Shown here: positions 4,821-64,000 of the stretch, in pieces | How positions within the stretch are numbered: position 1 is the first letter of the stretch | How the letters are laid out: every line of letters begins with the position of its first letter | Virus record (IMG/VR): IMGVR_UViG_3300028920_000022 | Location: 310,001 to 374,000 of that record | DNA length: 64,000 nucleotides | Direction: 5' to 3' (one strand) | Notes under the pieces: model-generated | The model's input: the letters and a program-made list of their open reading frames with translations, nothing else | Databases searched by the model: none | Told to the model about the DNA's origin: nothing | Made by a program: the position numbers and the translations under genes

Positions 4821-4821
4821 C

Positions 4822-34291: not shown

Positions 34292-34651
34292 ATGGATAAT
34301 TTAATTGATAAGATTGTACCATATTTACAAGCCAGGCTGTCAGATTCTGATGGGCAAGTTTTTGATATAGAAGATTTAAAGAAATTTATAAGAATATCTA
34401 TAAGTATTAATGCGCCATATCCTGATAATGATTTAGATAATTACTTTAAAATTCATTTGGAAAGCATAGTTAGTTATGCTGCTGTTAAAGCTTTGGCTGC
34501 ACATGCGTTGAAAGAAAAGGGTTGCGAGTTTAGAGATGTCACTGACACCACATTGCCACCTAAATTGAGTGAGTTTTTGTTACAGGCGTCTCAACAAGAG
34601 TTTGATAGTTGGATGCGTATAAAAGAATTAGAGGAAAGAAATGGGAGTTAA
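34292..34651 (+). CDS. Hypothetical protein
   Basis: 119-aa ORF with GAGG RBS. Confidence 0.55.
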   Translation: MDNLIDKIVPYLQARLSDSDGQVFDIEDLKKFIRISISINAPYPDNDLDNYFKIHLESIVSYAAVKALAAHALKEKGCEFRDVTDTTLPPKLSEFLLQASQQEFDSWMRIKELEERNGS

Positions 34652-44900: not shown

Positions 44901-45081
44901 GATTACATCAGGAGTATTGGTAAGGAAGGAAGATATTGCTAATACTAGTTATGTATTCGAGCTAGAGGATGGAGAAGAAATCACTCTACGAGGTGACGAA
45001 AAGGTAGAATATGATGGTGAAACTCATATTGCTGCTAATTTATACGAGGCGTTAAAAGAAGGTATTTACGGTAACATGTGA
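41938..45081 (+). CDS. nrdJa: Class II (B12-dependent) ribonucleotide reductase, large part, intein-containing
   Basis: GGRIMANAG, SCINC, GGGRRGAQM, TNP[intein]CSEQPL, APTGT, SKTINVP, GLKGVTTYR; NrdJa-type C-terminus EYDGETHIAANLYEALKEG. Confidence 0.9.
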   Translation: MFKQDICYEIWGGESGKYRLRDSDGTAIDQSPEDTCARVARALADVEPADQEKWYKEFVRVLGTRFAGGGRIMANAGAGKYKKETSCINCVVMRQLPDSMLGIMSVATEAALTLKAGCGVGYDFSSIRPKGAHVFGAGAATSGVMSFIEIFNSVCQTVMSGGGRRGAQMGCLDAQHPDIEEFILSKRKDGAFRYFNFSVLITDAFMHAVENGDDWDLWFWNKSNKTKDEVDVKIIEKNDIPYNHPESQYFSFAEDHVECVYSKRTPDVVFEKKVFRTLKANELFELITKSTYNFSDPGFILIDKMNRENNLYFLETIRSTNPCVTGDTLISTNEGLVPAKNLVGKKITVPVDFRMERGVNAETSYWKKTREDAQILKLQTKEGYSIKATPDHRIMTNDGWKELQNLSPGDKVHIYQGNGAFGSKGSFGEGAVFGWLVGDGTITGQKAVLSFWGEEEHILAKSMAKYASKMVANETSAKANRSYDELCAYSVEERNESRVASVRLRRIVEREGLVENKLQVPPSVWAGTEAMQRGFLSGLFSADGTVGNKNSVSVRLSSTSPDLLSQVQVLLQGFGIASKIYLNRNPAGYRSLPDGHGGHKEYLCKAGHELIISKYNLVNFMNRIGFLLPYKQKALLNNIDSLNVLGPRPEHFTATVESVTKDGIEDVYDCSVPGVNAFIANGLVIHNCSEQPLSPLSNCLLGSMMLPVYVRNPFTSDAYFDWEGFAKDVRVASRMLDNVIEINNLPLPELEENLRYQRRHGLGFTGLGSVLNMLGIKYNSSTGVAFGEKISKTMAQQSLLESIHLAREKGPAPFSELIENRARFLNSEYNKRLLETFQETQAIIEQVMEYGVRWSHATSLAPTGTMSLTWGNNCSNGLEPVFMNSYLRNIRMPGKKTKTQMEVFDYAYYEWRQLFGDDPLPNTWVTTDDLTIEDHLNMQAAIQKYVDSATSKTINVPTECSYEDFKNVYIEGWKRGLKGVTTYRFNPKITSGVLVRKEDIANTSYVFELEDGEEITLRGDEKVEYDGETHIAANLYEALKEGIYGNM
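42904..43998 (+). mobile_element. Intein with LAGLIDADG homing endonuclease (365 aa)
   Basis: Begins CVTGDT, block B ATPDHRI, LAGLIDADG motifs FGWLVGDG and LSGLFSADG, ends VYD..VIHN followed by extein Cys. Inserted in the TNP/C.E active-site motif. Confidence 0.95.
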
Positions 45082-51200: not shown

Positions 51201-51237
51201 TAAAGATGATGGCTCTGCTAGGGATTTGGAGACATAA
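48229..51237 (+). CDS. Glycine-rich fibre-like virion protein
   Basis: RITNLADPINPQDAVTMAYVD neck motif; many GG-x-hydrophobic-x-I-x-x-G beta-repeats; 6 DGY. Confidence 0.7.
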   Translation: MTRYPDNVDTGGTGASATLPDVIDNVSPVSAIVVNRLRNAILAIENELGINPSERFGTVRDRLDCLEFGPCGSGGGGSLSTILQDGVTVMNNVEALNIIGANVTDAGDHQADVNFSTFMLLDGSRAATANWDLGGNRITNLADPINPQDAVTMAYVDALFSDGYAPVLETLTVSADGQTVFTLSQVPELPGAVAFFAEGIKQEFGVDYTVSGANIHYTGAEPLLTTDTIDVIYYVLSSGFPGGGIHQTLAQTLFYGNVTGGEDIVVSVTDAITSENPAVPVSVIGDLSITGKLTVGGLIDPTGLVLDTQGSTPGGVPAANKGTIWYRASDEHMVYTTDAGLVIDLTTGIVPTLAEVLDAGNTTDGYDIIMSNGSIITATTGTGATDGSDVDILAGPATGTGAGGAVNINGGSAAAGAGGNVVIYGGDGGTEGDVLVGAAGNTVFSVIGDVLGTITFDKDVAPIINQTAPTSGAGSDFRIDVQDATTTGTGGDFIVNAGSGAGVSQGGAIDLNAGGTGTGSGGIVSITGGDGTINGGTITLESGAAATGGDLELFAGDSAAGTGGNVIVKTQGNTIGDIQFLLDANTVAEFLGSALGTFRFGRATTPVINVEQNTSGAGAAFTITSQKGGSGGVNDGGGLFLNGGNASDLGGDGGAVEISGGTGTNTGIIALHTNIIEIDENTVDIRSVTDGSVNADSGSFAIHSGNITDAGNSGSVIFNSGSSAGGDSGNLDLYTGGASTSGSIQAYTGDGYTDSGDIDIYTGDGYTSSGDIDIVTGDATYGTAGHLHLTAGDSLSGNQSDIYIASGRVLTGTDRNLVNIYGGDGYSNGSTINIIAGAGYWGSGGTLNLYGGSGSTSSVHADDLGPGDGGSVLVSGGGCISGTCGDASLGGGVTAHGTGGNVYINGGFTHDGPSAGSVYISGGVDYGGNDDGYVIFSMADEEVGRFGRDPSALVCSLQVPIKLKEVANPGRPATGYAYLYLSSTDGHLWINKDDGSARDLET

Positions 51238-51239
51238 AT

Positions 51240-51626
51240 ATGGGAACTTATTCAGAACGAGTTATTGGGTATGAGTTTGGACCTGTTGTTATTTCAACTA
51301 TCACTACAGTTACTGTGGGAACGATTGATGGAACCGATTTGAGAGGAATAACACAGAATTATAGCGCAGACGTTGAAATTCATGCGGTCCGATATGGAGG
51401 TGCTACGGGTTATACAGGTACAGCTACCAACACCGCGTCTGCGGAGCGAGGCACTGGTGACGTTCTTTGTCATAATGGTACGGCTGTTCTACTTGGAAAT
51501 GGTATAGCGAATGTATCGTTGGATGATAGTGGAACCGACATTTTAGTCAAATTGTCGACTAATCAGAATGGAGCCATGTCACACTTTGTCTGGCTTGTAT
51601 TTCGGGTAGCGGGTGATGTAGCATGA
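51240..51626 (+). CDS. Hypothetical beta-rich protein (possibly fibre-associated)
   Basis: 128-aa ORF directly after the fibre gene, with GGAG RBS. Confidence 0.5.
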   Translation: MGTYSERVIGYEFGPVVISTITTVTVGTIDGTDLRGITQNYSADVEIHAVRYGGATGYTGTATNTASAERGTGDVLCHNGTAVLLGNGIANVSLDDSGTDILVKLSTNQNGAMSHFVWLVFRVAGDVA

Positions 51627-52408
51627 GAATTACTGTTCTTTGCCCAACACATCGCGGTCCAACTGAGTTGCTTAGTGTGACCCGAATGTTTCGGAATCAG
51701 CGTCACCAGGATCGGCGATTGGTGTTTATTGAGAACGGACCTGCGCTGGGCGTCTCACGGTCGTTAGGAATTGTTGCGGATGCTGTGATGCAGTCCGATC
51801 ATTCCAAAGTTTCGGCGCTCAACGTCGGGTTGGCGTGGCTCCGCACGCATGGAGGCGGGGCTTGGGCTTTATGGGATGATGACGACTACTATGGTCCTGA
51901 ATATTTAACCGGAGTAGCTGTTGTTTTGCCAAAATATAATTTGATTGGTAAACGTTCCTTATATGTACGCCGTAATGATGGGCGGTTGTGGTTGATAGAA
52001 CGTTCTGCCGGATGGCCACTTGGTCATAGCTTTGCTGGTTGGTCGGATTGTTGTGATTTTCGTGAGTGTAATAGGTGGGGAGAAGATGATTTCTTCGTAC
52101 AAGATATGTTAGATCATGGTGCACAAATTGGCGACTCTGGCGCCACTTCATTTGTGTGGCAACGATCAGGTGATTTATCGAAACATATTTGGCCAGCTAC
52201 GGATGACCAAATTGCCCAAATTTTAACACTTAAAAGCGCCAATAGTAAAATTATTGATTATGGAAATGCGAATCGCATATTGGTAGACTGTGTTGAGAAA
52301 CAGTCAGGAAGAGTTGTAGAACTTCCTGATTTCGATCCGCTCAACGTACCTGGAATTCCCATCGAATTCCAAGAAAAAATTAAACAGTTGAGGGTTAATA
52401 ATGGTTAG
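51623..52408 (+). CDS. Glycosyltransferase family 2 embedded in the fibre module
   Basis: RITVLCPT, ALNVG, ALWDDDDYYGPEYL, GEDD. Confidence 0.8.
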   Translation: MRITVLCPTHRGPTELLSVTRMFRNQRHQDRRLVFIENGPALGVSRSLGIVADAVMQSDHSKVSALNVGLAWLRTHGGGAWALWDDDDYYGPEYLTGVAVVLPKYNLIGKRSLYVRRNDGRLWLIERSAGWPLGHSFAGWSDCCDFRECNRWGEDDFFVQDMLDHGAQIGDSGATSFVWQRSGDLSKHIWPATDDQIAQILTLKSANSKIIDYGNANRILVDCVEKQSGRVVELPDFDPLNVPGIPIEFQEKIKQLRVNNG

Positions 52409-55400
52409 AACTAGAGAAGGATTTTTAGGCGGAATAACCATATTGGATGAGGATGGTTACGGATTGGTTACAGCTAGTAATGCCCGTATTACCAACGTTA
52501 CCGACCCTGTTAATCCACAAGATGCTGCCACTAAAAACTATGTAGATGGTTATTTTGAAGCTCATAATGAATGGAGTGAAATTTTAGCTATTGGAAATAT
52601 AACTGATGGAAATAATCCTACAATTAGTACTGGAGACAAGATTGTAGGAGAAACAGATCTTGAATTAGACTGTGCTGCTGATGGATATGTAATAGTTAAT
52701 GCTGGTGGAACTGAAATTGTTCGTTTCGGTTTGGGAAGCTTGGCGATGCAGTTTGGGGATTCTGATAATGCAATTATTGGATTCCCCACTTCGGCTACTG
52801 ATGGTGTTAGCCTTACTATTAGGGGACAGGGTGGGAACGCAAGTTTCGCAGATGGCGGAAATGTGTTTATCATGGGTGGTGATAGCGGTGGCGGTGGCGG
52901 TTCTGCTGGTGGAAATGTTAACATTTCATCTGGCGACGGCTCGGGGGGCTCCCCGGGTGACATTAATATTGAAACCCCAGCCGTGACAAGTTCTTGTGGC
53001 GGAAGTATTAATATAAACACCGCCAACTCTAGCGCTTGTGGTCCTGGTGGAATTTTTGTCACTGTTGGAAATACTTCTGCTGGTTATGGTGACAGCTACT
53101 CATATAGTCCTAATGTTGGCTCGATACCATCTCCAGTATCTTATAAACTTGTTTTAAGAACAGAAGACGGATCTGCTGTAGGCAGTTGCGGAGGTATTTT
53201 ATTTAAAGTTGGTGATGCCAATTATACCCCAGCTCCATTGACTTTAATTGGTGGTGACTCATCTTCTGCTACAGGGACCAAGGGTGGAGATGTTATAGTT
53301 CGTTCGGGTAATAGTGACTTTGGTGAAGGTGGGGACCTTTTTATTATATCGGGATCATCTAGTGGTACCGGAGATGGTGGAGATATTTATATTCGTACCG
53401 GAGATGGTGGAGTAGGTGCCGGGGATGGCTATATTATCTTCGAAGCCACTTCGAGTAATGAAATTGCTCAATTTAATAATTTAAACGGAAATCCTACACT
53501 TCAATTTGGCAATCATGGAGCCGCACTAATTACACAAGATAGCATAGCAACTGCCGCTGAAGCGTTTACCATTAGAGCACAATCTTCCACTGGTTCAACT
53601 GGCGGTGATTTAGAATTATATTCTGGTGATTCTGCTTATGCCCAGTACCCAGGTGATGTTAACATTTACAGCGGTGTTGGTGGAGGACAAGTTTATTCTG
53701 GTAATATTAATCTTTCTACGGATTTGGGGTATACTTCGATCGGTGGTGGCGGCAATATTTCTATTACCACAAATCAAAGCAATGGTTTGAGGGGTGGATC
53801 TATTCTTTTGCAAACCGGTGACGCTTCTAGTGGTGGCCCAGGTACTATCACAATTGCAACCGGAAATGCGAATTCTGGCACTGGGAACCAACATATCAAT
53901 ATAACTGCCGGAAACCAAATCGCTTCATTTAGCGGCGCAGCGGGTAGCGTAAATCTTACTTCCGGAAATGGTACCGGAACATCTGATGCCGGAAGTGTAA
54001 CACTTACAGCAGGAAATTGTGATACTGGGGCGCCAGGAACAATTCTTCTTGTTGCTGGAGATGCCGGCGGCGGAGTAGATGGTGGCGACGTTACTATTCG
54101 AAGTGGATCTGGCGGCAGCGGAGCAGGAGATGGTTATATTATTTTTGAAGCCAGTGTTAGCGGTGAAATTGCTCAATTCAACAATTTAAACGGAAATCCT
54201 ACACTTCAGTTTGATAATCACGGATCTGCAGAAATTAATGGATCTCAAAATTTCTCAATCTATGGGTTAGATAGCGGAACCGTTGATACTTTAATGATGG
54301 GATTGAGCGGTGATAATCTTTTGGTTGGCGATGGCACAAGCGTTGATGATGTGAGGTTGCAATCAGCAACCGCGGTTGAAGCATGGGTTGCAGGATCCAG
54401 AGTGATCGAAATGAGTACCGGCAGTCTTTTCTTTGCATCAGCGGTTGCCGGACCGGTTATTCAACAAGAGCAGACAGGCAACGAAAATTGTGATGATTTG
54501 ACATTACACGCTCAAAATGTCGTAGTAACAGCTGGTGGTCCATTTACTGCAGGAGATATGGTCGTTGCAGCCGGGCAGGTTTCATCAGATAGTGGCGCCG
54601 GCACCAGTAGTGGTGGTGATGTAATCTTACAACACGGAAAATACCAAGACACTGGTTTGCTTCAAGGCGCTAAATTAGGACAAGATGTAAATGGACAATA
54701 TATAAGTGTAGGAGCCGCTTCGGTTTCATCAACCGGCATGGTGCGTGGACCGGAAGACTTCTCGATCTATGGATTAAACACTACTCCGGCTAATGCTAGA
54801 TTAATAGCTTTTGATGATGACGATCTTAGAGTTGGTGATACTAATAATAGCAATTTGTATCTTTCAACTGGTCCCGCTGCGGGAGCCGACGGGTATGTTG
54901 TTTTAGAATCTGATGTTAATGAAATTGTTAGGTTTAGCAGTGATGGAACAGGGGATGCATTTATAGGGTTTGATGTTGGATTTACTAATGGTATTGGTTT
55001 AGCCATAGAGGCTCAAACTACCATGGCTGGAATTGGTGGCGAGCTTTATTTAGCCGCAGGTGATAGTAGCTCTGGATTCGATGGAAATGATGTAACTATA
55101 AAATCTGGCACAGCAGGTGCCGGGCCAGGTAGTGATGGATACATTATTGGAATGATTGGCGGCACAACTGAGTTTACAATAGGACCCAATTACTTTGCGC
55201 ATAGCCCTAATGGATGTAATGTTTCTAGAACAGGTTATTGGCGTAACGGAGAAATATTAGACATTGCTGCACTTGTGAACGGAGGAGCGTTTGATGCCAA
55301 TATTTTGTGGTGGTACAATGATACACTTTTACTTGGAGATGCTACTCGTTCTGACTCTTCTACTTTAGCATCTAATACTGCAGTAAATTTGCGTATTGGT

Positions 55401-56765
55401 AATGATGGTGTTTTTAGGGTTCGTAGTGGCTGGGTAGAAATTCACCCTAATGGAGCCGCCAGCTCTGGGCTTGGAACCATTGCCGGACCTGAAAATTTTG
55501 ACATTTATGGGTTAAATACTGTTCCTGCTGACGCAAGACTAATAGGGCTGGATGGTAACGATCTTCGTGTTGGTGACGCTAATAATAGCAATTTGTATCT
55601 GTCAACCGGACAAGCCGTACCATCTGGGGTTGATGGATATATTATATTCGAACGTGGCTCCGGAAATGAAATATTTAGAGTAGATGAAGATGGTTATAAT
55701 AATATAGATCGTATTTTCTTCTATGGTGATCGTGATTATGATACCATGATTACTAGAGATATTCCAGGAGCTACCACTAGTAACTTATCTAGAGATTTAA
55801 TCATACAAGGACAAACTGGATATTATCCAAATAGATCTGGAAATCTTATCTTGTCCAGCGGTGACTTGACTTCCTACGGTAGTGGAAGTCTGTATGGCGC
55901 CATTGAGTTTCATATTGGAGGATATGAGTCCGATACCACCTTTAAGATGAATGATGATGGTAGAATTGAGTGGGGCGCTGATAGTTTGATGGGGCTTGTG
56001 GCTACTAGTACTACAGGCGCCGGTGCGACTATGGAAATATACGCTCAAGAATCTTCCGCCAATAACGGTGGAGATGTAGATATCCGAGGCGGAGAGGCTT
56101 CTGGTGTGACGGGCGATGGTGGTGATGTTGATATCACTGGAGGAGCATGTCCTAGCAATACCGGCGGAAATGTTAATATATATTCTGGTGATGGTGACGC
56201 AAGCGGTGTGGTCAATATAGGCTATAGCGGATCCTTTGATATCGTTACTTTTGGGGTACAGACACTTGTTGAACCAACGACTGCATACTACATTTCTCGC
56301 TCTAGAGTAGCATCTTCTGATGAATACGCCCTGAAAGCTTTTTCTCCTAATTCGGTATTAACTACACTTGCCCCAAATGGTACCGCTGATGGCTATACCC
56401 AACAGGTTATCTTTGAAGTAGGAACAACAACTACTTGGAATGGCGATCAGGAAACCTGTTTGGCCGTTGCTATACCTACAAATTATTATGGGAAAATAAC
56501 TGTGGATGTTACCGCAGAAGACCAGGCTGATCCCCAGAACGCTTATGGCTATGCTAATTCGTTCTTGATCAGTAATGATGCAGGTGTAGTTACCATCAGA
56601 GATAGTAGCCTGGCTCCTACTGAACAAGATCCTCAGGCTACCGGTGTGTCAGCGACAGTAGATGCAAATGGTGATGATGTTAGGGTTAGAGTAACAGGTA
56701 ATGTTGGAGAAAATTGGACCTGGACAGCTATGATGCATGGAATTGTATGTGAGCGTAGTGTATGA
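52401..56765 (+). CDS. Glycine-rich fibre-like virion protein with internal duplicated modules
   Basis: RITNVTDPVNPQDAATKNYVD neck motif, GGD-x-x-I repeats, duplicated modules; 10 DGY. Confidence 0.7.
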   Translation: MVRTREGFLGGITILDEDGYGLVTASNARITNVTDPVNPQDAATKNYVDGYFEAHNEWSEILAIGNITDGNNPTISTGDKIVGETDLELDCAADGYVIVNAGGTEIVRFGLGSLAMQFGDSDNAIIGFPTSATDGVSLTIRGQGGNASFADGGNVFIMGGDSGGGGGSAGGNVNISSGDGSGGSPGDINIETPAVTSSCGGSININTANSSACGPGGIFVTVGNTSAGYGDSYSYSPNVGSIPSPVSYKLVLRTEDGSAVGSCGGILFKVGDANYTPAPLTLIGGDSSSATGTKGGDVIVRSGNSDFGEGGDLFIISGSSSGTGDGGDIYIRTGDGGVGAGDGYIIFEATSSNEIAQFNNLNGNPTLQFGNHGAALITQDSIATAAEAFTIRAQSSTGSTGGDLELYSGDSAYAQYPGDVNIYSGVGGGQVYSGNINLSTDLGYTSIGGGGNISITTNQSNGLRGGSILLQTGDASSGGPGTITIATGNANSGTGNQHINITAGNQIASFSGAAGSVNLTSGNGTGTSDAGSVTLTAGNCDTGAPGTILLVAGDAGGGVDGGDVTIRSGSGGSGAGDGYIIFEASVSGEIAQFNNLNGNPTLQFDNHGSAEINGSQNFSIYGLDSGTVDTLMMGLSGDNLLVGDGTSVDDVRLQSATAVEAWVAGSRVIEMSTGSLFFASAVAGPVIQQEQTGNENCDDLTLHAQNVVVTAGGPFTAGDMVVAAGQVSSDSGAGTSSGGDVILQHGKYQDTGLLQGAKLGQDVNGQYISVGAASVSSTGMVRGPEDFSIYGLNTTPANARLIAFDDDDLRVGDTNNSNLYLSTGPAAGADGYVVLESDVNEIVRFSSDGTGDAFIGFDVGFTNGIGLAIEAQTTMAGIGGELYLAAGDSSSGFDGNDVTIKSGTAGAGPGSDGYIIGMIGGTTEFTIGPNYFAHSPNGCNVSRTGYWRNGEILDIAALVNGGAFDANILWWYNDTLLLGDATRSDSSTLASNTAVNLRIGNDGVFRVRSGWVEIHPNGAASSGLGTIAGPENFDIYGLNTVPADARLIGLDGNDLRVGDANNSNLYLSTGQAVPSGVDGYIIFERGSGNEIFRVDEDGYNNIDRIFFYGDRDYDTMITRDIPGATTSNLSRDLIIQGQTGYYPNRSGNLILSSGDLTSYGSGSLYGAIEFHIGGYESDTTFKMNDDGRIEWGADSLMGLVATSTTGAGATMEIYAQESSANNGGDVDIRGGEASGVTGDGGDVDITGGACPSNTGGNVNIYSGDGDASGVVNIGYSGSFDIVTFGVQTLVEPTTAYYISRSRVASSDEYALKAFSPNSVLTTLAPNGTADGYTQQVIFEVGTTTTWNGDQETCLAVAIPTNYYGKITVDVTAEDQADPQNAYGYANSFLISNDAGVVTIRDSSLAPTEQDPQATGVSATVDANGDDVRVRVTGNVGENWTWTAMMHGIVCERSV

Positions 56766-57685
56766 AAAAGTTAGTACATAATATTCTGCACCCAACAAAT
56801 ATCCCAAATTGCAAATTATGGTGGGAAGGAGATTTTACCCCTAACGCGGGTAACGTTATAGATGCTGATGGTGATGATTATGTTTATTCTTCTATTCCCA
56901 ATCGCGGAGAACTTGGAGGAGACTTTAGTTCTGCCACTTATAAACCATTAGTTTCTCACCTAGAGAGCGGAGGTTTTCCTAGAAGAGTACCATATTTTAC
57001 AGACGGTTATCAAATAAGCTCTTTGGCTCCAAGTAGCTGGAAGTTTTTGCATAAGGAATTTACTCTTGTGTTTGTAGTTTTTTGTGCCGATACAGGTACA
57101 ATATTTAGTACTTTTAGTGATCCTAGTGATTCAGGAATAGATATAGTTTTGTGGAAAGAAGCGGATGGTGGAGATATAACATTGTATGTTGGTGATGGTT
57201 CTGGTGGCGTGGCTATAAATGATAGCGCCCATGGTTTAACGGATAATATATTACATGTGTGTTCAATTAGATTAGCACAAACCGGTTATGATGTTAGGAT
57301 TGATCAAGAAACAAAATTAGAAGATGTTCCAGCTTGGCCGTTAACTGTGGATGATCCCCCAGATACCTTAAACATTGCATGCCGAAGCGGAGTTACTAAT
57401 CAATTTACGGGTAATCTAATCGCTGCTGTTGCATATGATGGCTATCTGGCTTTAGAGCAATTGGAACAAATAGAATATCACTTTATCTCTAAATATGGAG
57501 ATCAAAGCGTTCATGTGGCTCAAAAACCTACTTTTTATTTTAATATTGATATGACACCCTATGGTTATCATATAGACGTTGAAAATCCGGATTCGGGGTT
57601 GTATGCGAATAGATTGGCGGATTTTTCTGGGAATGCTCATGATGCTTTCCAAAATACCAAAAATAAACAGGGAAAAATAGATTAG
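56762..57685 (+). CDS. LamG-like receptor-binding/fibre protein, short paralog of 58273 and 60834
   Basis: CKLWWEGDF..SIPNRG, WKFLH, KPTFYF, DFSGNAH..QNTKNKQG all align with the N-terminal parts of the two downstream genes. Confidence 0.65.
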   Translation: MKKLVHNILHPTNIPNCKLWWEGDFTPNAGNVIDADGDDYVYSSIPNRGELGGDFSSATYKPLVSHLESGGFPRRVPYFTDGYQISSLAPSSWKFLHKEFTLVFVVFCADTGTIFSTFSDPSDSGIDIVLWKEADGGDITLYVGDGSGGVAINDSAHGLTDNILHVCSIRLAQTGYDVRIDQETKLEDVPAWPLTVDDPPDTLNIACRSGVTNQFTGNLIAAVAYDGYLALEQLEQIEYHFISKYGDQSVHVAQKPTFYFNIDMTPYGYHIDVENPDSGLYANRLADFSGNAHDAFQNTKNKQGKID

Positions 57686-57717
57686 CTAATATTTCGACAT
57701 CACAATAAAGGAGAAAT

Positions 57718-58269
57718 ATGAGCGGTTTTGGTCCATCAAGTGTAGCTACTATTCAAGCCGATATTACCGCAATTGAAACCGATCTTGCGTCAATTGAAGA
57801 TCGTGCTGTCACTATTCCCGCTGGTACTACTTCAGTAGCAGAGCGGTTTATTACGCCATTAACGGCACATGTAGCTTCTCAAGCTTTACCTGTAGCTGGG
57901 GCTTTTACAAATCAAGCTTTGGCAGCCATACCTGATGGAGCGAAGCGAATCATATTTTGGGTTGCATTTACCCGAGGCTCTGCCACAAGTTCGGCTAGAT
58001 TTAGAGTAGAATTTAGCCCTGATGATGCCAACGGGTATAGAACTTCTGTTATCAATGATTCTAGTTTTTATTCTTCTGGGCAGGAAGGTAATGTTGAGTT
58101 TTATACAGAAACTGTTGAAGGTCCGGTGCCTGATGCGGCTGCAGCTACGAGGTATATATTAGCTTTTGATATACCATCTGGATCCAGTTCGTTTAGGCTT
58201 TTAGCGGCAGAAATGGGAGATGTGGGAAACCCGGGAACAATAGCTATAGATTATGTGGCAGAAGGATAA
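57718..58269 (+). CDS. Hypothetical virion protein
   Basis: 183-aa ORF with AAGGAG RBS; short N-terminal coiled coil then beta-rich domain. Confidence 0.55.
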   Translation: MSGFGPSSVATIQADITAIETDLASIEDRAVTIPAGTTSVAERFITPLTAHVASQALPVAGAFTNQALAAIPDGAKRIIFWVAFTRGSATSSARFRVEFSPDDANGYRTSVINDSSFYSSGQEGNVEFYTETVEGPVPDAAAATRYILAFDIPSGSSSFRLLAAEMGDVGNPGTIAIDYVAEG

Positions 58270-58272
58270 AAA

Positions 58273-60837
58273 ATGGTTCTTGGTTCATTTGCTAAAAGAA
58301 CATTATTAAACCCTGGTAGTGTAACTAGAGTTTCTGCTGGTACTAAATTAACTTATGCGTCTAATGTGCCGATTCCGACATTATGGGTTGAGTTTGATTA
58401 TGGGACCTCGATTGACTCTGCTTCTGAGCCGTGGGTGTATTCGTCGGTAACGAACCGGGGCACGTTGGGCGGAACATTTTCGTCTGCCGGAGCTGCGAGG
58501 CTTCAGGTCGCGCACATCGAGAGTGGTAGCTTTGCGCGTCAGGTTGCGCGGGGAGACGGAAGCGCGACGTATGCGGACTGGAGTGCTGCCCTAGCGGACC
58601 AGAAGTTCCTGCACGGCGATAAGGTAATGATCGACCTCACCTTGCGAGTGAACAGCTTTACCGCTGGCGACACGGTGATCGATTCCTGCGCTTGGGGCGG
58701 AGGAAACACCGGGATCCTTGTCTACGTGTCGGCCGTTGGGCAGCTGACAATCGTGCTCAATAATGGCACGGGCACGACGTGCGTTGCCTACACAACCGGT
58801 AGTAACAATATCGTAGCTGGTACGGTTCACACCGTGACCTTGATCCACGATTCGACCCGTTCGCCGCAGACCGAAGTTCTAGTCGACGGAGTGCAGGTCA
58901 ACACCCATGCCATGACGGGTACGCCGTCTACCGGTAATGCGACCTATTCGTTGCGCTTGGGACACCGCAATTCGGGCGGCACCGCGTTTGATGGTCAAAT
59001 CCTTGCGCTCGTTGCTCGTGTTGGCACGTATGTAGCGGCAGAGGGTGCGCTAGTGCGTGGCTACCTCTCCGCGAAGTACCAGCAGCAGAACGCTCAGTCT
59101 CTCCAAGTGCCGACATTCTATTTTAATCTTTCTGTTTATGACGATTATACGATTGACACTGGCAATGCGGAGCCGGGAGACCAAGTAAATCGAATTATAG
59201 ATCTTAGTGGAAATATTCATACTGCGATCCAGAACACCGACGCCAAGCAAGGCACCCTCGGCACCGACAGCGACGGTAACACCGAGATCGCGGTGGACGG
59301 AACGGCGGACTACTACGGGGTTGCGGCTGGTGGCGGTTGGCCGTCGGGAACAAGCCACACGATCTGGGCCGAACTTGACAGCGACAACCCGACTGTCCCA
59401 ACAGAGTTTTTGTTCGATTTCCAAACCGGGCGACTTGCGCTTGGGACGCGGATGGGCGGGACCGGAAAGGCAGGAATATACATATCCGGATATACCGGAG
59501 TCGCTGACAACATCGCTGGTGAACAGTCACTAGAGTGGCACCTCGACGACACCGCTAACACGGTAAGCATGTACCGGACCGGGCAATACTTGGGAGAGGG
59601 CGCGTACATTGGATCAATTGCTATGGGCGGGACCGTCACCCTGGGCATTCACCACAACGGTAGCTCAGCCCCATGGGACGGGGCATTCCAAGAACTCTGG
59701 GCCCGCGATTCCCTCCAGTCCACTACCGAAATCTTCGAGTCCCGCGCCGCACGAGCCGCACGCTACCCGACGCGGTGGGCGGACACGCTGCCGCTGGTTG
59801 TACCGGTGGGCCCCGAAGGTTGCTGGTTCGATACGAGTGACGCGGCGAATTTCGTGCTGGATGGGACCGACATCATCGTCGCCAAGGACTGCAGCCGGCT
59901 GATTGACGATCCGGTCAGCAATGGGGACTTTGAGACGGGCAGTCCGCCGAGCGATTGGACTGCTATTAGCGGTGATACCCTGTCGGCACAGGCAGGCGCG
60001 CGAACCGGCGGCAGTGGTTCACAGATCCTTCGCGGTAGGATCGAGATAGGAGACACGCTTGGATATGCCGTGCAGTCCTGCCTCACGGTTGGACAGCGAT
60101 CCATGTTCGACATTTGGATGCGCGGTGACGGTACCAACGGCTACCCGAGGGTAACGGACAGTGGCGGGGTGAATGTCTGGACCGGGACCACATCCAACAC
60201 GTGGCAGCACGCAATAGCTGTCGTGAACTCGAACCACGCCGATCTAACGCTGCAGACACGTGGTGACAACGCGACCCAGGACTACGCCGAATTTGACGAC
60301 CTGATCGTCACCCCCGGCAACCACGCCTACCAGCCCACCGCCGCGAACCGGCCGACGTATGACGTGGCGAACGGGTGTATGAACTTCGTGGCGGCGAACT
60401 CGGAGTGGGCGGACACGGGGATCGTACCGGGCGTGGCTGGGTCGGTTGACTTGTGGGTCAAGCAGACTGCCGGCACCTACGCATGGGGAGCGTACAACGC
60501 TGGCGCGAACAAACTCTGGCTCCAGAACAGCGGCGGAAATTGGCTCCTCGCGCTGGGGACGGATACGCTGCCGAGCGGGGTTGCAGTGTCCGGTGCGTGG
60601 CAACACGTAACGTGCACGTGGGGTGCCGGAGCATATTCGATCACCGTCGATGGCACGCGAGTGACCGGGACATACACCAGCGGGCTACCAACGATCGCAA
60701 TCTTCCTCGCGTGCCGTAACTTGATCGGCGTAGCAAACACGTTCAGCGATGTCCAAATCAGCGGCTACCAGCATCGCCCCTACGCCATGACTGCCGATCA
60801 AATTGCGTACCTCCACACCCTCGGGCGCAACCCATGA
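58273..60837 (+). CDS. Multi-LamG/CBM-like putative receptor-binding protein (GC mosaic)
   Basis: LamG-like repeats (VDLWVK, WQHVTCTW, ITVDG) and CBM-like SNGDFETG..W; paralog of 60834-63386. Confidence 0.7.
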   Translation: MVLGSFAKRTLLNPGSVTRVSAGTKLTYASNVPIPTLWVEFDYGTSIDSASEPWVYSSVTNRGTLGGTFSSAGAARLQVAHIESGSFARQVARGDGSATYADWSAALADQKFLHGDKVMIDLTLRVNSFTAGDTVIDSCAWGGGNTGILVYVSAVGQLTIVLNNGTGTTCVAYTTGSNNIVAGTVHTVTLIHDSTRSPQTEVLVDGVQVNTHAMTGTPSTGNATYSLRLGHRNSGGTAFDGQILALVARVGTYVAAEGALVRGYLSAKYQQQNAQSLQVPTFYFNLSVYDDYTIDTGNAEPGDQVNRIIDLSGNIHTAIQNTDAKQGTLGTDSDGNTEIAVDGTADYYGVAAGGGWPSGTSHTIWAELDSDNPTVPTEFLFDFQTGRLALGTRMGGTGKAGIYISGYTGVADNIAGEQSLEWHLDDTANTVSMYRTGQYLGEGAYIGSIAMGGTVTLGIHHNGSSAPWDGAFQELWARDSLQSTTEIFESRAARAARYPTRWADTLPLVVPVGPEGCWFDTSDAANFVLDGTDIIVAKDCSRLIDDPVSNGDFETGSPPSDWTAISGDTLSAQAGARTGGSGSQILRGRIEIGDTLGYAVQSCLTVGQRSMFDIWMRGDGTNGYPRVTDSGGVNVWTGTTSNTWQHAIAVVNSNHADLTLQTRGDNATQDYAEFDDLIVTPGNHAYQPTAANRPTYDVANGCMNFVAANSEWADTGIVPGVAGSVDLWVKQTAGTYAWGAYNAGANKLWLQNSGGNWLLALGTDTLPSGVAVSGAWQHVTCTWGAGAYSITVDGTRVTGTYTSGLPTIAIFLACRNLIGVANTFSDVQISGYQHRPYAMTADQIAYLHTLGRNP

Positions 60838-62465
60838 CGCGCATTTTAACCTCAAAGAATTTATTTAGTGTAACCGGTTCCGACAAAATCGGATGGAGCC
60901 CCGCCTCAATCGCAGATTGTCAACTGTGGTGGGAATGTGATTTTTCAGATAAAAGAGGAAGATCTATTACACCCGGACCGCCAGATGTATATGATTCAAT
61001 TCCAAATTTAGGCAGATTTCTGGGTACGTTTGATGCCGCCGCAGCTGCGCGCCCTACCGTTGCCTATATAACCTCAAATGATGTAATTAGACAAGTTGCC
61101 CTCTTTGACGCTACCAATGATAGATTGCAAAGTAGCTTGGCTGCCACTAATTGGAAAAATTTGCACTCAGGTAACTTTACCATATTTGCCGTATATAGAC
61201 CTACGACTGATTCTGCTGGATATATTTTCGCTACCCAGGAAAATAACGCCAATAATACCGGAGTAGCTATATATTTCAATACCGAGGCTAATGGTGGAGG
61301 GTTTACCGTAAGTAATGGAACCGGCGTTTATGTCATTAATCAAAGCTCTGGCGTTGATACAGTAACCGTTGGTGAAGTGTGTATCCAGGAAGTATACGTA
61401 GAACAAGGAGCTATTACCGAATATGAAATTGTTATCAATGGTATAGCTAATGTTGGAGGACCATTAATAGGCGATCCGTCTAGTGGAGATCCCACAAATA
61501 CCGCAGCAATTGGGGCTGGAAGTAATGCTTCTACAGATCCTTTCGGTGGTCAAATAATGGCGATTATTGGATACGATCGATCACTTACAGATTTAGAAAG
61601 AGCGGTGATTAGGGATTATTTAGCAAGTAAGTATCAAGAGAATGGAGTTTCGGTAGAACAGAATCCTACGTTTTATTTCGATTTTAGTACAAAAAGAAGT
61701 TACCATATAGACACAGGAAATGCTCAAGCTGGGGAACAGGCGGATATTTTATATGATTTAAGTGGAAATGCTCATCAGGGTATTCAAAATACAAATAATA
61801 AGCAGGGTACTATGGGTTTTGATGATGATAATAATAGGGAAGTGGAAGTTGATGGGACGGCTGATTGTTATGCATTGAGCGCCGCCGCGGGTTGGCCGGC
61901 TGGAACGAGCCACTCGTTTTGGTGTGAATACGATCCTGACGGCTCCACCGGCGCAAATCAGTATTTCGTGGACTTCGCCACCGGGCGCCTAATCTTTGCG
62001 CACCTTGGCGTGACCGGAAAATTGGGTGTGTACGATGGGTCATGGAGAGGATTGGGATCTGCGATTACCGGTGAGCAGTCAGTGGAATTTCACTGCAACG
62101 ACACAGCCAACACGATCGAGGCTTACCGAACCGGCACCCTAGTTGGACAGGCTACTTACGGCGCATCCGTGGCGATGGGCGGAACCACTGCGCTGTTATC
62201 GCACAATGGGCAAGCGGCTGGGTTTATTGATGGTTCCATCCAAGAACTCTGGGGCCGCGATTCCCTCATGTCGACCACCGAAATCTTCGAGTCCCGCGCC
62301 GCCCGTGCAGCAAAGTATCCTACTCGGTGGGCTGATACTTTACCATTAGTTGTACCAGTGGGACCGGAAGGATGTTGGTTCGATACTAGTTCAGCTGATA
62401 ATTTTGTATTGGATGGCACGGACATCATCGTCGCCAAGGACTGCAGCCGGCAGATTGACGATCCG
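59687..62465 (+). repeat. Dispersed direct repeats between the two LamG paralogs
   Basis: 59687-59750 similar to 62239-62302; 59869-59913 vs 62421-62465 (44/45 identical). Further blocks outside this span: 60342-60365 = 62882-62905 (24 bp) and 60821-60838 = 63370-63387 (18 bp). Confidence 0.9.
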
Positions 62466-63386
62466 CTGGTGGACGGTGACATGGAAGCGGTGGGGACCGC
62501 TAACTGGGCGTCACTGTCCGGCGCCACGATCACGAAACAGGGCGGCGCATATCAGGGCGCACAATGCCTGCGTGCCGCTCTCGCCGTCGCTGACACGTTC
62601 GGGGCCGCCCGTCAGGTGGCGTTGACGGTCGGCGAGCGGTATTTGGTCGAAGGTGTTGCTCAGGGTGACGGCACCAACGGTTTCCCGCGTCTATATTTTG
62701 GCGGTTCTCAGAACCTGTGGAACGGCACAACGGCCAACGCTTGGCAGGAGTGCGTAGCGGTCGAAACGGCTGGGTTCACTCAACTGGACTTGGGCGTCGG
62801 TGGTGTCAATGGCACGGCTGACTATGCTGAGTGGGATGCAGTCACCATCACCCCCGGAAACCACGGCTACCAGGCTACGAGCGCGAACCGGCCGACGTAT
62901 GACGTAGCCAACAAATGCATGACATTCACGGCGGCGAACAGTGAACTTCTAGACTGGGTGGTCCCGAACGCAAGCGCGGGAACATTGTTGGGGTGGGTTA
63001 AGTTCGGGGGTGTGCAACAAACACTGGCTGGATCATGGGATACCAGCGACTATTGCTTGCTCGAATTGGACGGCGCACAAAAGGTTCGGGCATATGTCGG
63101 AACACACGTTATCGTTAGTACAAACACACTGTCTACTGGTGTGTGGCACCTTCTGGCTATAACGTGGGACGGATCATCTGAAACGTTATACATTGACAAC
63201 TTGCCCCCGCAGTCTAAATCAGACGGGGACTCTGCCAGCACCCGTGCCTTGACCGTTGGGGCGCGTGATTTCAACGGTGCGATCGATTGGTATTTGAACG
63301 GATCGATCAGCGACGTACAGCTTCGTCCCTACGCAATCACGGCGGCTGAGTACGCCTACCTCTACGGCATCGGGCGCAACCCATGA
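60834..63386 (+). CDS. Multi-LamG/CBM-like putative receptor-binding protein (GC mosaic)
   Basis: TLLGWVK, WHLLAITWDG, LYID, YLNGSISDV; collinear with 58273-60837, and both end in GRNP. Confidence 0.7.
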   Translation: MTRILTSKNLFSVTGSDKIGWSPASIADCQLWWECDFSDKRGRSITPGPPDVYDSIPNLGRFLGTFDAAAAARPTVAYITSNDVIRQVALFDATNDRLQSSLAATNWKNLHSGNFTIFAVYRPTTDSAGYIFATQENNANNTGVAIYFNTEANGGGFTVSNGTGVYVINQSSGVDTVTVGEVCIQEVYVEQGAITEYEIVINGIANVGGPLIGDPSSGDPTNTAAIGAGSNASTDPFGGQIMAIIGYDRSLTDLERAVIRDYLASKYQENGVSVEQNPTFYFDFSTKRSYHIDTGNAQAGEQADILYDLSGNAHQGIQNTNNKQGTMGFDDDNNREVEVDGTADCYALSAAAGWPAGTSHSFWCEYDPDGSTGANQYFVDFATGRLIFAHLGVTGKLGVYDGSWRGLGSAITGEQSVEFHCNDTANTIEAYRTGTLVGQATYGASVAMGGTTALLSHNGQAAGFIDGSIQELWGRDSLMSTTEIFESRAARAAKYPTRWADTLPLVVPVGPEGCWFDTSSADNFVLDGTDIIVAKDCSRQIDDPLVDGDMEAVGTANWASLSGATITKQGGAYQGAQCLRAALAVADTFGAARQVALTVGERYLVEGVAQGDGTNGFPRLYFGGSQNLWNGTTANAWQECVAVETAGFTQLDLGVGGVNGTADYAEWDAVTITPGNHGYQATSANRPTYDVANKCMTFTAANSELLDWVVPNASAGTLLGWVKFGGVQQTLAGSWDTSDYCLLELDGAQKVRAYVGTHVIVSTNTLSTGVWHLLAITWDGSSETLYIDNLPPQSKSDGDSASTRALTVGARDFNGAIDWYLNGSISDVQLRPYAITAAEYAYLYGIGRNP

Positions 63387-63447
63387 CCCGTCTCGCCGCG
63401 GTCGCCCCGTTCGTTGCGGAGCCGACCAACAAAGGTTATCGCAAAAC

Positions 63448-64000
63448 ATGAAAGAGGAAATGGAGAAACTGCTGATACGAATTATACTTCTTATTACCGC
63501 TTGCACCCCGCCAATACAACAACCAAATCCCGAACAATCGGCAGCAGTCCTGCTACGTCTTAATCACCCATATTGTGGCGCCGTGGCGGTTAGTCCACAC
63601 CACCTCGTAACCACCGAACATTGTATGATGGGAGCTACTATAGTAGAATACCTGGATCAAGATGGTTGGCGATTCTGGAACCCACATTCGGCAACATTAA
63701 TACGTACCGATAAACCACGAGACCTAGCCCTGCTCGAAACCGAATACCCGCTTACTTCATGGAGTAAACCTCGCACCGAAGAATTAGTTGCGGGTGAACC
63801 GGTATGCACCAGTGCTCGATTTACTTGGATCTGCGGCAAGGTAATACATCCACTCACGCTTGCATGTGTGGATCGTGGAAATGGTAAACTATGTTCGAAA
63901 AAATCCATCGAAGCCCAAGAATGGTTGACTGAAACAGATTTGCCCACTTGGGTTGGATTGAGCGGATCGGGTGTGTGGGATGCACAAGGTAGAATTGTGG
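63448..64000 (+). CDS. Trypsin-like (S1) serine protease lipoprotein, 3'-partial; absent from ORF track
   Basis: Manual translation: MKEEMEKLLIRIILLITAC (lipobox), CGAVAVSPHHLVTTEHC (His), RDLALL (Asp), GLSGSGVWDAQGRIV (Ser). Confidence 0.8.
   Translation, partial: MKEEMEKLLIRIILLITACTPPIQQPNPEQSAAVLLRLNHPYCGAVAVSPHHLVTTEHCMMGATIVEYLDQDGWRFWNPHSATLIRTDKPRDLALLETEYPLTSWSKPRTEELVAGEPVCTSARFTWICGKVIHPLTLACVDRGNGKLCSKKSIEAQEWLTETDLPTWVGLSGSGVWDAQGRIV

What the first reader, a model, noticed from the sequence alone, without database searches (positions are those of the whole stretch)
56762..63386. Three-paralog receptor-binding array whose module boundary coincides with a GC switch
Seen: the short AT-rich paralog ends at QNTKNKQGKID. 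The two long paralogs continue past the equivalent motif (QNTDAKQG, QNTNNKQG), and near there their DNA turns GC-rich (from about 59225 and about 61875). Example counts: 42/60 G+C in 60301-60360 versus 16/60 in 61741-61800. Inference: a resident N-terminal module is fused to C-terminal LamG/CBM modules imported from a high-GC donor, a host-range shuffling locus. The imported parts lack DGY.
Basis: partly seen in the sequence, partly recalled or inferred. Interest (0 to 1): 0.7.

Follow-up and report, generated by a model that had tools for sequence, protein, structure and literature searches.

The report
Mosaic GC-rich cassettes in phage fibre genes
Three related sugar-binding-type tail genes of a 459-kb sediment phage are real patchworks of AT-rich native DNA and GC-rich DNA, most likely swapped in from high-GC relatives at conserved motifs. 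This is a clear but ordinary case of tail-fibre mosaicism, not a new kind of system.

Summary
Genes A (56762-57685), B (58273-60837) and C (60834-63386) are paralogs in a 458,729-bp, 39.5% GC jumbo-phage record. Third-codon-position GC is 0.24 in A, 0.66 in B and 0.48 in C, against a genome median of 0.33.

C switches sharply at codon 347/348 (window 61875). B is GC-rich from codon 32 (58366), so its N-terminal module is GC-rich too. A second AT patch lies in C (62305-62418). Both patches cover the best-conserved protein motifs.

An independent assembly of the source run spans every junction at uniform depth, so this is not a chimera. Full-length four-domain homologs (LamG-LamG-CBM-like-LamG) occur elsewhere, and all five sequenced homolog contexts have 54-67% GC. 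One of them sits in the tail-fibre position of a myovirus-like contig. The architecture was therefore not created by fusion here.

A is a truncated copy: domain 1 plus the orphaned first strands of domain 2. The best explanation is homologous exchange of domain-sized cassettes with GC-rich relatives, anchored at conserved motifs. No donor was identified, and receptor binding is inferred only.

The parts
56762..57685 (+). Paralog A (307 aa). It is LamG-like domain 1 plus about 50 residues that correspond to the first strands of domain 2, then a stop. It is AT-rich throughout (GC 0.374, GC3 0.24).
   Evidence: In the AF2 model, residues 10-246 fold well and the tail 249-307 has pLDDT 38-64. Its start overlaps the stop of the upstream 1454-aa gene.
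57718..58269 (+). Gene X (183 aa) lies between A and B. It has native composition (GC3 0.25) and unknown function.
   Evidence: No Pfam or PHROG match. The nearest ESM Atlas clusters are viral hypothetical proteins at score 0.88, which is a lead only.
58273..60837 (+). Paralog B (854 aa) has four beta-sandwich domains: D1 residues 37-270 (LamG), D2 282-497, a linker 498-540, D3 545-681 (CBM-like) and D4 695-850 (LamG). Its GC3 of 0.66 is the highest of any large ORF in the genome.
58273..58365 (+). The 5' end of B has native composition: 31 codons at GC3 0.10. It encodes the disordered N-terminus that precedes the conserved LWxExD motif.
   Evidence: Change point at codon 31/32, LLR 22.6. pLDDT is below 50 for residues 1-29.
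58366..59112 (+). GC-rich block 1 of B (GC 0.58), which is domain 1.
   Evidence: GARP/FYMINK ratio 1.76.
59113..59227 (+). AT-rich patch in B (GC 0.365; 10/38 GC3). It covers the family-wide conserved motif PTFYFN...DLSGNIH, which forms the first strands of D2.
   Evidence: permutation p<2e-4. It is only about 55-65% identical in DNA to the same stretch of A and C, so it is not a recent conversion from them.
59228..60845 (+). GC-rich block 2 of B (GC 0.615; GC3 up to 0.93). It covers the rest of D2, the linker, D3, D4 and the ATGAC start overlap with C.
60834..63386 (+). Paralog C (850 aa) has the same four-domain architecture and overlaps the stop of B (ATGA).
60846..61877 (+). Native-composition part of C (GC 0.41, GC3 0.28). 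It covers D1, the conserved junction motif and the first strands of D2.
61878..62304 (+). GC-rich block 1 of C (GC 0.59), the body of D2.
   Evidence: Change point at codon 347/348, LLR 49.3. The abrupt switch is visible in the sequence.
62305..62418 (+). AT-rich patch in C (GC 0.45; 9/38 GC3) inside the D2-D3 linker. That linker is 93% identical in protein between B and C. The patch is flanked by exact 26-nt and 31-nt matches to B.
62419..63430 (+). GC-rich block 2 of C (GC 0.59). It covers D3, D4 and about 45 nt beyond the stop.
63383..63451 (+). A 22-codon GC-rich remnant ORF (MTRLAAVAPFVAEPTNKGYRKT*). It starts in the same ...GGGCGCAACCCATGAC context as C and probably marks the right-hand end of the imported DNA.
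   Evidence: (repeat family D3).
63448..64000 (+). Trypsin_2-like gene (227 aa, runs past the window end), GC3 0.38. A gene of this Pfam family is a conserved neighbour of the LamG family in other contigs.
48229..56765 (+). Upstream large genes of native composition (1002, 128, 261 and 1454 aa). Two of them have weak matches to the T7 tail-fibre N-terminal domain. They form one co-directional, overlapping block with A.
   Evidence: Neither large protein has a PDB sequence match.

Best explanation
The locus is the distal end of a tail-fibre or adhesin gene block of a 459-kb jumbo phage. It holds three anciently diverged members of one uncharacterised family of multi-beta-sandwich proteins (LamG, LamG-like, CBM-like, LamG).

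The GC-rich stretches are domain-sized cassettes obtained by recombination with homologous genes of high-GC phages or prophages. Crossovers fell in the few stretches that stay conserved across the family:
- the LWxExD motif at the start of D1;
- PTFYF...SGNAH..Q.T at the start of D2;
- the D2-D3 linker;
- the ...GRNP stop / ATGAC end of the gene.

This left short pieces of resident AT-rich sequence at or beside those anchors. B kept only 31 N-terminal codons and a 115-nt patch. C kept D1 and the start of D2. A is a truncated, fully native copy.

Shown: the paralogy, the composition map, assembly integrity, the family architecture, GC-rich relatives and the discordant affinities of the domains. 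Inferred: the direction and mechanism of transfer, the virion location, carbohydrate or receptor binding, and any effect on host range.
For: - Composition: GC3 change points are far beyond the permutation null. The shift is in GC3 as well as GC1 and GC2 and in amino-acid usage. B has the highest GC3 of all large ORFs in a genome whose median ORF GC3 is 0.33, SD 0.08.
- Integrity: Logan contigs of the source run cover 57600-59898 on one 27.4-kb contig and 60318-62450 on another. Depth is uniform at 24.6-26.8. Breaks occur only at the exact 31-mer shared by B and C and at a minor-variant branch.
- Family: phmmer against 1.84 billion representatives gives 300 hits, including full-length homologs with the same domain order.
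- GC-rich relatives: their contigs have 62%, 54%, 67%, 66.7% and 67% GC, with gene GC3 of 0.46-0.77.
- Position: P0009 sits after Sheath_initiator and Baseplate_J and before the lysis genes in a myovirus-like contig.
- Trees: monophyly of A+B+C in D1 is rejected (AU p=0.02). B and C are sisters at 100/99 in D2 plus linker (60% identity). B's D4 is sister to P0026 (99/94, 46% identity), from a 67% GC contig with the same Trypsin_2 neighbour.
- Same sample: low-depth (2.6-5x) GC-rich contigs are present. One is 94% identical to B 60144-60334, with differences mostly at third codon positions. A similar-depth contig is about 91% identical over 60318-60419 and then diverges after the conserved ANRPTYDV region.
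Against: - No donor or close relative (over 50% identity) of any segment was found, so transfer is inferred from composition and distant trees only.
- The AU tests do not reject B+C sisterhood in D1 (p=0.12) or D4 (p=0.30).
- The spanning contigs are an independent assembly of the same short-read run. They are not long reads.
- The genome has another region of raised GC3 (genome 48.7-83 kb), so its composition is heterogeneous in general.
- Nothing shows that these proteins are in the virion or bind a receptor.
- There are no matches in GenBank phages, PHROGs or IMG/VR.
Confidence: 0.68

Rival explanations
1. Reverse polarity. The whole B-C tandem (about 58366-63430) entered as one block from a GC-rich phage that already had a tandem pair. 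Later, C's D1 and the two about 115-nt patches were overwritten by AT-rich alleles from relatives of the resident phage. The mechanism is the same, but the history and the 'resident' parts differ.
For: - B and C are sisters in D2 plus linker, yet only 60% identical. Their split therefore predates any un-ameliorated import.
- Both genes end in the same GGGCGCAACCCATGAC context, and a GC-rich remnant ORF starting with MTR follows C.
- The AT patch in C is flanked by stretches nearly identical to B.
Against: - No AT-rich source of the linker patch exists in this genome.
- C's D1 has long-term AT-type amino-acid usage.
- This history needs at least as many events as independent imports.
Confidence: 0.2
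2. An intrinsic compositional process produced the pattern rather than import. Candidates are GC-biased gene conversion or repair at a recombination hot spot, or selection on codon usage or DNA structure in the variable parts.
For: The low-GC3 patches coincide with the most conserved motifs and the high-GC3 parts with the variable segments. No donor was found.
Against: - The edges are abrupt, changing within a few codons.
- Amino-acid usage shifts as well.
- A, and D1 of C, belong to the same family at the same locus yet stay at GC3 0.24-0.28.
- All five sequenced homolog contexts have 54-67% GC.
- The genome encodes no reverse transcriptase, so there is no DGR.
Confidence: 0.07
3. Chimeric metagenome assembly. 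The assembler hopped between an AT-rich and a GC-rich phage at shared conserved words.
For: This is a single-sample metagenome record. The family has conserved motifs, and the sample holds other GC-rich family members at low depth.
Against: - All six composition junctions lie inside unbranched contigs of an independent k=31 assembly, at uniform depth of 24.6-26.8.
- The GC-rich relatives in the sample have depth of only 2.6-5.
- All junctions are in frame within long ORFs.
- The only exact B/C repeats are 24-31 nt long and lie away from four of the six junctions.
Confidence: 0.04

Closest known systems
Mosaic tail-fibre and adhesin genes of T-even and P2-like phages. In these, recombination between conserved motifs swaps adhesin specificity (Tetart et al. 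1998 and Haggard-Ljungquist et al. 1992, from my own knowledge). See also the modular gp38 adhesins (PMC3157838) and tailspike modularity with horizontal transfer (PMC10408124).
   Same: Variable, domain-sized segments are bounded by short conserved motifs. The N-terminal part is retained while distal parts are exchanged. Tandem paralogs sit at the end of the tail module. There is evidence of exchange between unrelated phages.
   Different: - The protein family is unrelated: globular LamG and CBM-like beta-sandwiches, not trimeric fibre shafts with Gly-rich or His-box motifs.
- The exchange partners differ by about 25 percentage points in GC, so the mosaic is visible from composition alone.
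- No donor, receptor or host is known.
Multi-LamG 'structural protein', 'putative adhesin', 'baseplate wedge' or 'minor tail' proteins of cyanophages, jumbo phage PaBG and others (BFVD fold matches).
   Same: They have tandem ConA-like/LamG jelly-roll domains in large phage structural proteins (E 1e-27 to 1e-14).
   Different: Sequence identity is only 9-16%. There is no sequence-level match in GenBank phages or PHROGs. The domain order D1-D2-D3-D4 and the conserved junction motifs are specific to the metagenomic family found.
Diversity-generating retroelement targets (variable C-terminal ligand-binding domains of phage fibre proteins).
   Same: Both are a route to diversifying the distal, ligand-binding part of a phage tail protein.
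   Different: This genome has no reverse transcriptase and no template/variable repeat pair. The B/C repeat differs mainly at third codon positions with no adenine-specific pattern.

Membership tests
Laminin_G_3 / ConA-like lectin superfamily (PF13385) | Significant match to the Pfam model above the gathering score. | tested here: met
   B as a whole scores 56.3 bits and C 54.2 bits, against a cutoff of 27.6. By domain: B D1 E 2.3e-9, B D4 E 6.2e-7, C D4 E 5.1e-12. A and C D1 have no direct Pfam hit but are homologous to B D1.
Laminin_G_3 / ConA-like lectin superfamily (PF13385) | Jelly-roll beta-sandwich fold. | tested here: met
   The AF2 model of B has pLDDT 86.9 and four beta-sandwiches. 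Foldseek PDB hits are neurexin LNS and laminin LG domains and other ConA-like lectin domains.
Carbohydrate-binding module (domain D3) | Sequence or profile match to a defined CBM family. | tested here: inconclusive
   There is no Pfam hit for residues 480-700. The family profile matches the 8xmz chain at E 1.1e-6 over positions 525-654. The module occurs as 2-9 tandem repeats in many homologs.
Phage tail fibre / receptor-binding protein | Gene position in the tail or baseplate module. | tested here: met
   Homolog P0009 lies downstream of the TMP_3, Sheath_initiator and Baseplate_J genes and upstream of the lysis genes in L008. In the window, the genes follow two large proteins with weak Phage_T7_tail N-domain matches (E 9e-4 and 9e-3, below cutoff).
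Phage tail fibre / receptor-binding protein | Presence in the virion and binding to a host surface receptor. | not testable with these tools
   No host, proteome or binding data are available.
Phage tail fibre / receptor-binding protein | Match to a known fibre or spike family (PHROGs, GenBank phages). | tested here: not met
   No PHROG hit. No tblastn hit in 50,697 GenBank phage records.
Horizontally exchanged tail-fibre mosaic (T-even / P2 type) | Segments with different histories are joined at conserved motifs. | tested here: met
   Composition change points fall at or next to conserved motifs. Monophyly of A+B+C in D1 is rejected (p=0.02), while D2 plus linker gives a B-C sister pair at 100/99, and B's D4 is sister to P0026 at 99/94.
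Horizontally exchanged tail-fibre mosaic (T-even / P2 type) | Identifiable donor or near-identical segment in another genome. | tested here: not met
   The best external identities are 30-53%. Nothing was found in phages, IMG/VR or GTDB genomes.
Diversity-generating retroelement | Reverse transcriptase plus a template/variable repeat pair with adenine-specific differences. | tested here: not met
   No RVT_1 match in the 458,729-bp record. The repeats differ mainly at codon position 3 (34/52 mismatches), with mixed substitution types.

The most novel reading that the evidence does not exclude
The GC-rich cassettes, and perhaps also the GC3-raised accessory region with ArdC-like and RadC-like genes at genome 48.7-83 kb, may be a fingerprint of the mobilome of a high-GC host. 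On this reading, a 39.5% GC jumbo phage repeatedly draws receptor-binding domains from roughly 60-67% GC temperate myoviruses or prophages that share its host. The low-depth variant in the same sediment sample is B-like up to the D3/D4 boundary and different beyond it, which would show that this cassette exchange is ongoing within one community. If so, composition islands in fibre genes could be used to predict the hosts of uncultivated jumbo phages.
Probability: 0.2. Interest if true: 0.6.

Novelty: new member of a known kind. Interest (0 to 1): 0.4.

Why it matters
Modular exchange of receptor-binding parts is the main way phages change host range. It is usually inferred from comparisons of close relatives. 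Here the exchange partners differ so much in base composition that the crossover points can be read to within a few codons from a single genome, and they fall on conserved structural motifs rather than at domain borders.

The finding also defines an uncharacterised four-domain lectin-like family. The family has 300 metagenomic relatives and none in cultured phages. It sits in the tail-fibre position and has a conserved trypsin-like neighbour.

The practical value is modest. It gives a well-mapped example for studying recombination anchors in fibre genes, and a possible compositional clue to the host of an orphan jumbo phage.

Tried and rejected
- DNA search of the locus against GenBank phages (blastn) and protein B by tblastn: no match.
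- IMG/VR scans with the paralog alignment, the upstream 1454-aa protein and the TubZ-like protein: no relatives. The orthologous locus in a sister phage could therefore not be examined.
- Scans with the B-D4/P0026 alignment: nothing in genome contigs, and only a 35-residue match in viral contigs.
- Alignments A2 and A3 were too divergent for pattern scans.
- The contig of the closest word-search homolog, P0005, has no retrievable DNA.
- DGR hypothesis: rejected, because there is no reverse transcriptase and no adenine-specific repeat pattern.
- Recent gene conversion between B and C as the cause of the 93%-identical linker: rejected. DNA identity there is only 72-81%, with most differences synonymous.
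- Recent conversion of B's AT patch from A or C: rejected, because DNA identity is about 55-65%.
- Gene X compared with the small genes upstream of homologs in L005 and L006: no significant similarity. The Atlas look-up gave only sub-threshold viral hypotheticals.
- PDB sequence searches of the two large upstream proteins: no hits.
- The Foldseek PDB matches to lectin-like binding domains of various toxins are generic ConA-like fold similarity at 7-11% identity. They are not evidence of a toxin.

Full report
**Context.** The window is bases 310001-374000 of a 458,729-bp IMG/VR virus record that CheckV rates as complete. Genome GC is 39.5%, with an SD of 4.75 points in 500-nt windows. The window encodes hallmarks of a jumbo phage:
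- a TubZ-like tubulin (34641-36011);
- a UvsW-like helicase and a DnaB-like helicase;
- a ribonucleotide reductase interrupted by an intein with a LAGLIDADG domain (41938-45081).

It also holds a roughly 26-kb block of sugar-nucleotide and glycosyltransferase genes at about 31% GC. Almost all genes are on the + strand and many overlap by ATGA, including the genes of the finding.

**The three genes.** A (56762-57685, 307 aa), B (58273-60837, 854 aa) and C (60834-63386, 850 aa) are homologous. They are the only three copies in the genome: A against C gives E 6e-42 and A against B gives E 6.4e-31. A 183-aa gene X of unknown function lies between A and B.

An AlphaFold2 model of B, built on 20 family members, has mean pLDDT 86.9. 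It shows four beta-sandwich domains:
- D1, residues 37-270;
- D2, residues 282-497;
- a linker, residues 498-540;
- D3, residues 545-681;
- D4, residues 695-850.

D1 and D4 match Pfam Laminin_G_3. The family profile matches LamG-like and CBM-like chains in the PDB. Fold searches return generic ConA-like/LamG proteins, and among viral models they return cyanophage structural proteins, a putative adhesin of jumbo phage PaBG, a baseplate wedge subunit and minor tail proteins.

The motif at which the short paralog ends (PTFYFN...SGN.H..QNT..KQG) forms the first strands of D2. It is conserved across the whole family. A is therefore D1 plus the orphaned start of D2. In its own model, D1 folds with high confidence while residues 249-307 score only pLDDT 38-64.

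**Composition map.** Third-position GC is 0.24 in A, 0.25 in X, 0.27 in the upstream 1454-aa gene, 0.66 in B and 0.48 in C. The median over 626 ORFs of the genome is 0.33 (SD 0.08), and B is the highest of all large ORFs.

Maximum-likelihood segmentation gives two main change points:
- B at codon 31/32 (window 58366), LLR 22.6;
- C at codon 347/348 (window 61875), LLR 49.3.

The 99% permutation null is about 7 in both cases.

Two short AT-type patches interrupt the GC-rich parts:
- 59113-59227 in B, with 10 of 38 GC3;
- 62305-62418 in C, with 9 of 38 GC3.

Each is significant at p<2e-4 in 5000 permutations.

The resulting map is as follows.

| Gene | Segment | Composition |
|---|---|---|
| B | 58273-58365 | AT |
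| B | 58366-59112 | GC (0.58) |
| B | 59113-59227 | AT |
| B | 59228-60845 | GC (0.615) |
| C | 60846-61877 | AT (0.41) |
| C | 61878-62304 | GC |
| C | 62305-62418 | AT |
| C | 62419 to about 63430 | GC |

The edges are abrupt in the raw sequence.

**Is it real DNA?** One public run, a marine sediment metagenome that is probably the source sample, holds the stretch. Logan's independent k=31 contigs of that run cover it as follows:
- 57600-59898 on a 27.4-kb contig at depth 24.6;
- 60318-62450 on a 2.1-kb contig at depth 26.8;
- 62422 onward on an 80.6-kb contig at depth 24.7.

Breaks occur only at an exact 31-mer shared by B and C (59869-59899 and 62421-62451) and at a branch caused by a low-depth variant. 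All six composition junctions lie inside unbranched contigs at uniform depth, and all are in frame. A chimeric assembly is therefore very unlikely, although these are not long reads.

**Is the GC-rich DNA foreign?** Four lines of evidence agree.
1. The shift is strongest at synonymous positions.
2. Amino-acid usage shifts in the same direction. The GARP/FYMINK ratio of D1 is 0.88 in A, 1.08 in C and 1.76 in B, against 1.9-2.35 in homologs from GC-rich contigs. This indicates long residence in a GC-rich background rather than a recent local bias.
3. An exhaustive phmmer search of 1.84 billion representatives found 300 relatives. They include thirteen external proteins with the D1-D2 pair, seven of which carry all four domain types in the same order. 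Many more have 2-9 tandem D3 modules.
4. All five homolog contexts whose DNA could be read have 54-67% GC:

| Locus | Contig GC | GC3 of the homolog gene |
|---|---|---|
| L004 | 62% | 0.68 |
| L005 | 54% | 0.46 |
| L006/L007 | 67% | 0.73 |
| L008 | 66.7% | 0.77 |
| L013-L016 | 67% | 0.76 |

In L008 the homolog follows the tape-measure, sheath-initiator and Baseplate_J genes and precedes the lysis genes, which is the classical tail-fibre position. In L006 and L013 a Trypsin_2 gene is the direct neighbour, as it is after C in the window.

**Histories of the parts.**
- In D1 the three paralogs are as far from each other (about 30-38% identity) as from outside homologs. Their monophyly is rejected (AU p=0.02). 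A+C (p=0.18) and B+C (p=0.12) are not rejected.
- In D2 plus linker, B and C are sisters with 100/99 support at 60% identity.
- In D4, B is sister to P0026 (99/94; 46% identity) from a 67% GC contig. C is only 36% identical to B, although B+C is not formally rejected (p=0.30).
- B's D3 is 53% identical to a repeat of P0005 but only 43% identical to C's D3.

The linker is 93% identical in protein between B and C but only 72-81% identical in DNA. Of 52 differences, 34 are at third codon positions, and most are G/C in B against A/T in C. This reflects purifying selection on old copies, not recent conversion. B's AT patch is likewise only about 55-65% identical in DNA to A and C.

Because B and C are so diverged, yet both keep donor-like GC3, their GC-rich parts must have diverged before entering this genome. 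They entered either as two imports or as one tandem block that was later patched. The shared GGGCGCAACCCATGAC gene ends, and a 22-codon GC-rich remnant ORF after C, fit the tandem-block version.

**Mechanism proposed.** Every composition boundary lies at or beside a stretch conserved across the family:
- the LWxExD motif at the start of D1;
- the start of D2;
- the D2-D3 linker;
- the gene end.

This is the pattern expected if homologous recombination with divergent relatives can initiate only in conserved islands, as described for T-even adhesin genes and other fibre loci (PMC3157838, PMC10408124; the older primary papers are cited from my own knowledge). The crossovers are not at structural domain borders. 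They lie 38-67 residues into D2.

The same sediment sample holds low-depth (2.6-5x) GC-rich relatives:
- One 191-nt contig is 94% identical to B 60144-60334, with differences mostly at third codon positions.
- A contig of similar depth is about 91% identical over 60318-60419. It then diverges into a different D4-like sequence just after the conserved ANRPTYDV region.
- Other contigs share only the conserved anchors.

This is suggestive evidence, though not proof, of a local pool of exchangeable cassettes.

**Rivals.** A DGR is excluded, because the genome has no reverse transcriptase and the repeats show no adenine-specific pattern. An intrinsic GC-biasing process cannot be formally excluded without sister genomes. 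It fits poorly with the abrupt edges, the amino-acid shift, the AT-rich state of A and of C's D1 at the same locus, and the GC-rich relatives. Chimeric assembly is addressed above.

**Limits.**
- No donor was found.
- No relative of the phage itself was found.
- Function as a receptor-binding protein rests on fold, gene position in one homolog and neighbourhood only.
- The genome has another region of raised GC3 (genome 48.7-83 kb; small ORFs including ArdC-like and RadC-like genes). Compositional heterogeneity is therefore not unique to this locus.

**Verdict.** This is a real, well-resolved compositional mosaic in a tandem array of lectin-like tail genes. The specific model of a resident N-module fused to imported C-modules at a module boundary is only partly right. 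The phenomenon belongs to the known kind of mosaic tail-fibre evolution, while the protein family itself is uncharacterised.

Noticed in passing
window 7834-34010: A block of about 26 kb of glycan or nucleotide-sugar biosynthesis genes: GT4-like and Glyco_trans_1_2 glycosyltransferases, methyltransferase, a DHDPS/NAL-like gene, DegT aminotransferase, GDP-mannose 4,6-dehydratase and epimerases. Its GC is only about 30-33%, well below the genome mean of 39.5%. It is an AT-rich compositional island in the opposite direction to the fibre cassettes.
   Followed up: partly
window 34641-36011: A TubZ/PhuZ-like tubulin (Tubulin GTPase plus TubZ-like C domain). It sits next to a UvsW-like helicase (36011-37522) and a DnaB-like helicase (39252-40697), which are typical of jumbo phages.
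   Followed up: no
window 41938-45081: The ribonucleotide reductase large subunit is interrupted by an intein with a LAGLIDADG homing-endonuclease domain.
   Followed up: no
genome G000:C1:48700-83000 (outside the window; loci L010, L011): A region of about 35 kb of mostly small ORFs with raised GC3 (0.45-0.67, against a genome median of 0.33). It includes an ArdC-like antirestriction/metallopeptidase protein (L011:3653-4537) and a RadC-like JAB protein (L010:2274-2735). It may be an accessory or anti-defence region acquired from a GC-richer mobilome.
   Followed up: partly
window 60144-60433 and 63354-63390 (run X1): Low-depth (2.6-5x against about 25x) GC-rich contigs occur in the same sediment sample. 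One is 94% identical to B's D3, with mostly third-position differences. A contig of similar depth diverges after the ANRPTYDV motif into a different D4-like sequence. Others share only conserved family motifs.
   Followed up: partly
window 63448-64000 (gene ends about 130 nt beyond the window): A 227-aa Trypsin_2-like gene directly follows the array. A gene with the same Pfam domain is adjacent to family members in unrelated GC-rich contigs (L006/L007, L013-L015). This suggests a conserved functional pairing of unknown nature.
   Followed up: partly
window 57718-58269: Gene X (183 aa, Ala/Ser/Thr-rich) lies between the truncated paralog A and B. It has no family match. Small unrelated genes occupy the equivalent position upstream of homologs in L005 and L006.
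   Followed up: partly
window 3-7748: Two further large putative surface or structural proteins. One is a protein of more than 1587 aa with a Laminin_G_3 domain (not a paralog of A, B or C). The other is an 892-aa protein with dockerin-type and EF-hand-like calcium-binding repeats.
   Followed up: no
L009 (JGI 3300041075, 481-kb contig): Another jumbo-sized contig at 39% GC encodes a 1745-aa protein with three D3-like modules at native low GC3 (0.24), next to an 1812-aa beta-helix protein. The D3 module therefore also circulates in AT-rich giant phages.
   Followed up: no
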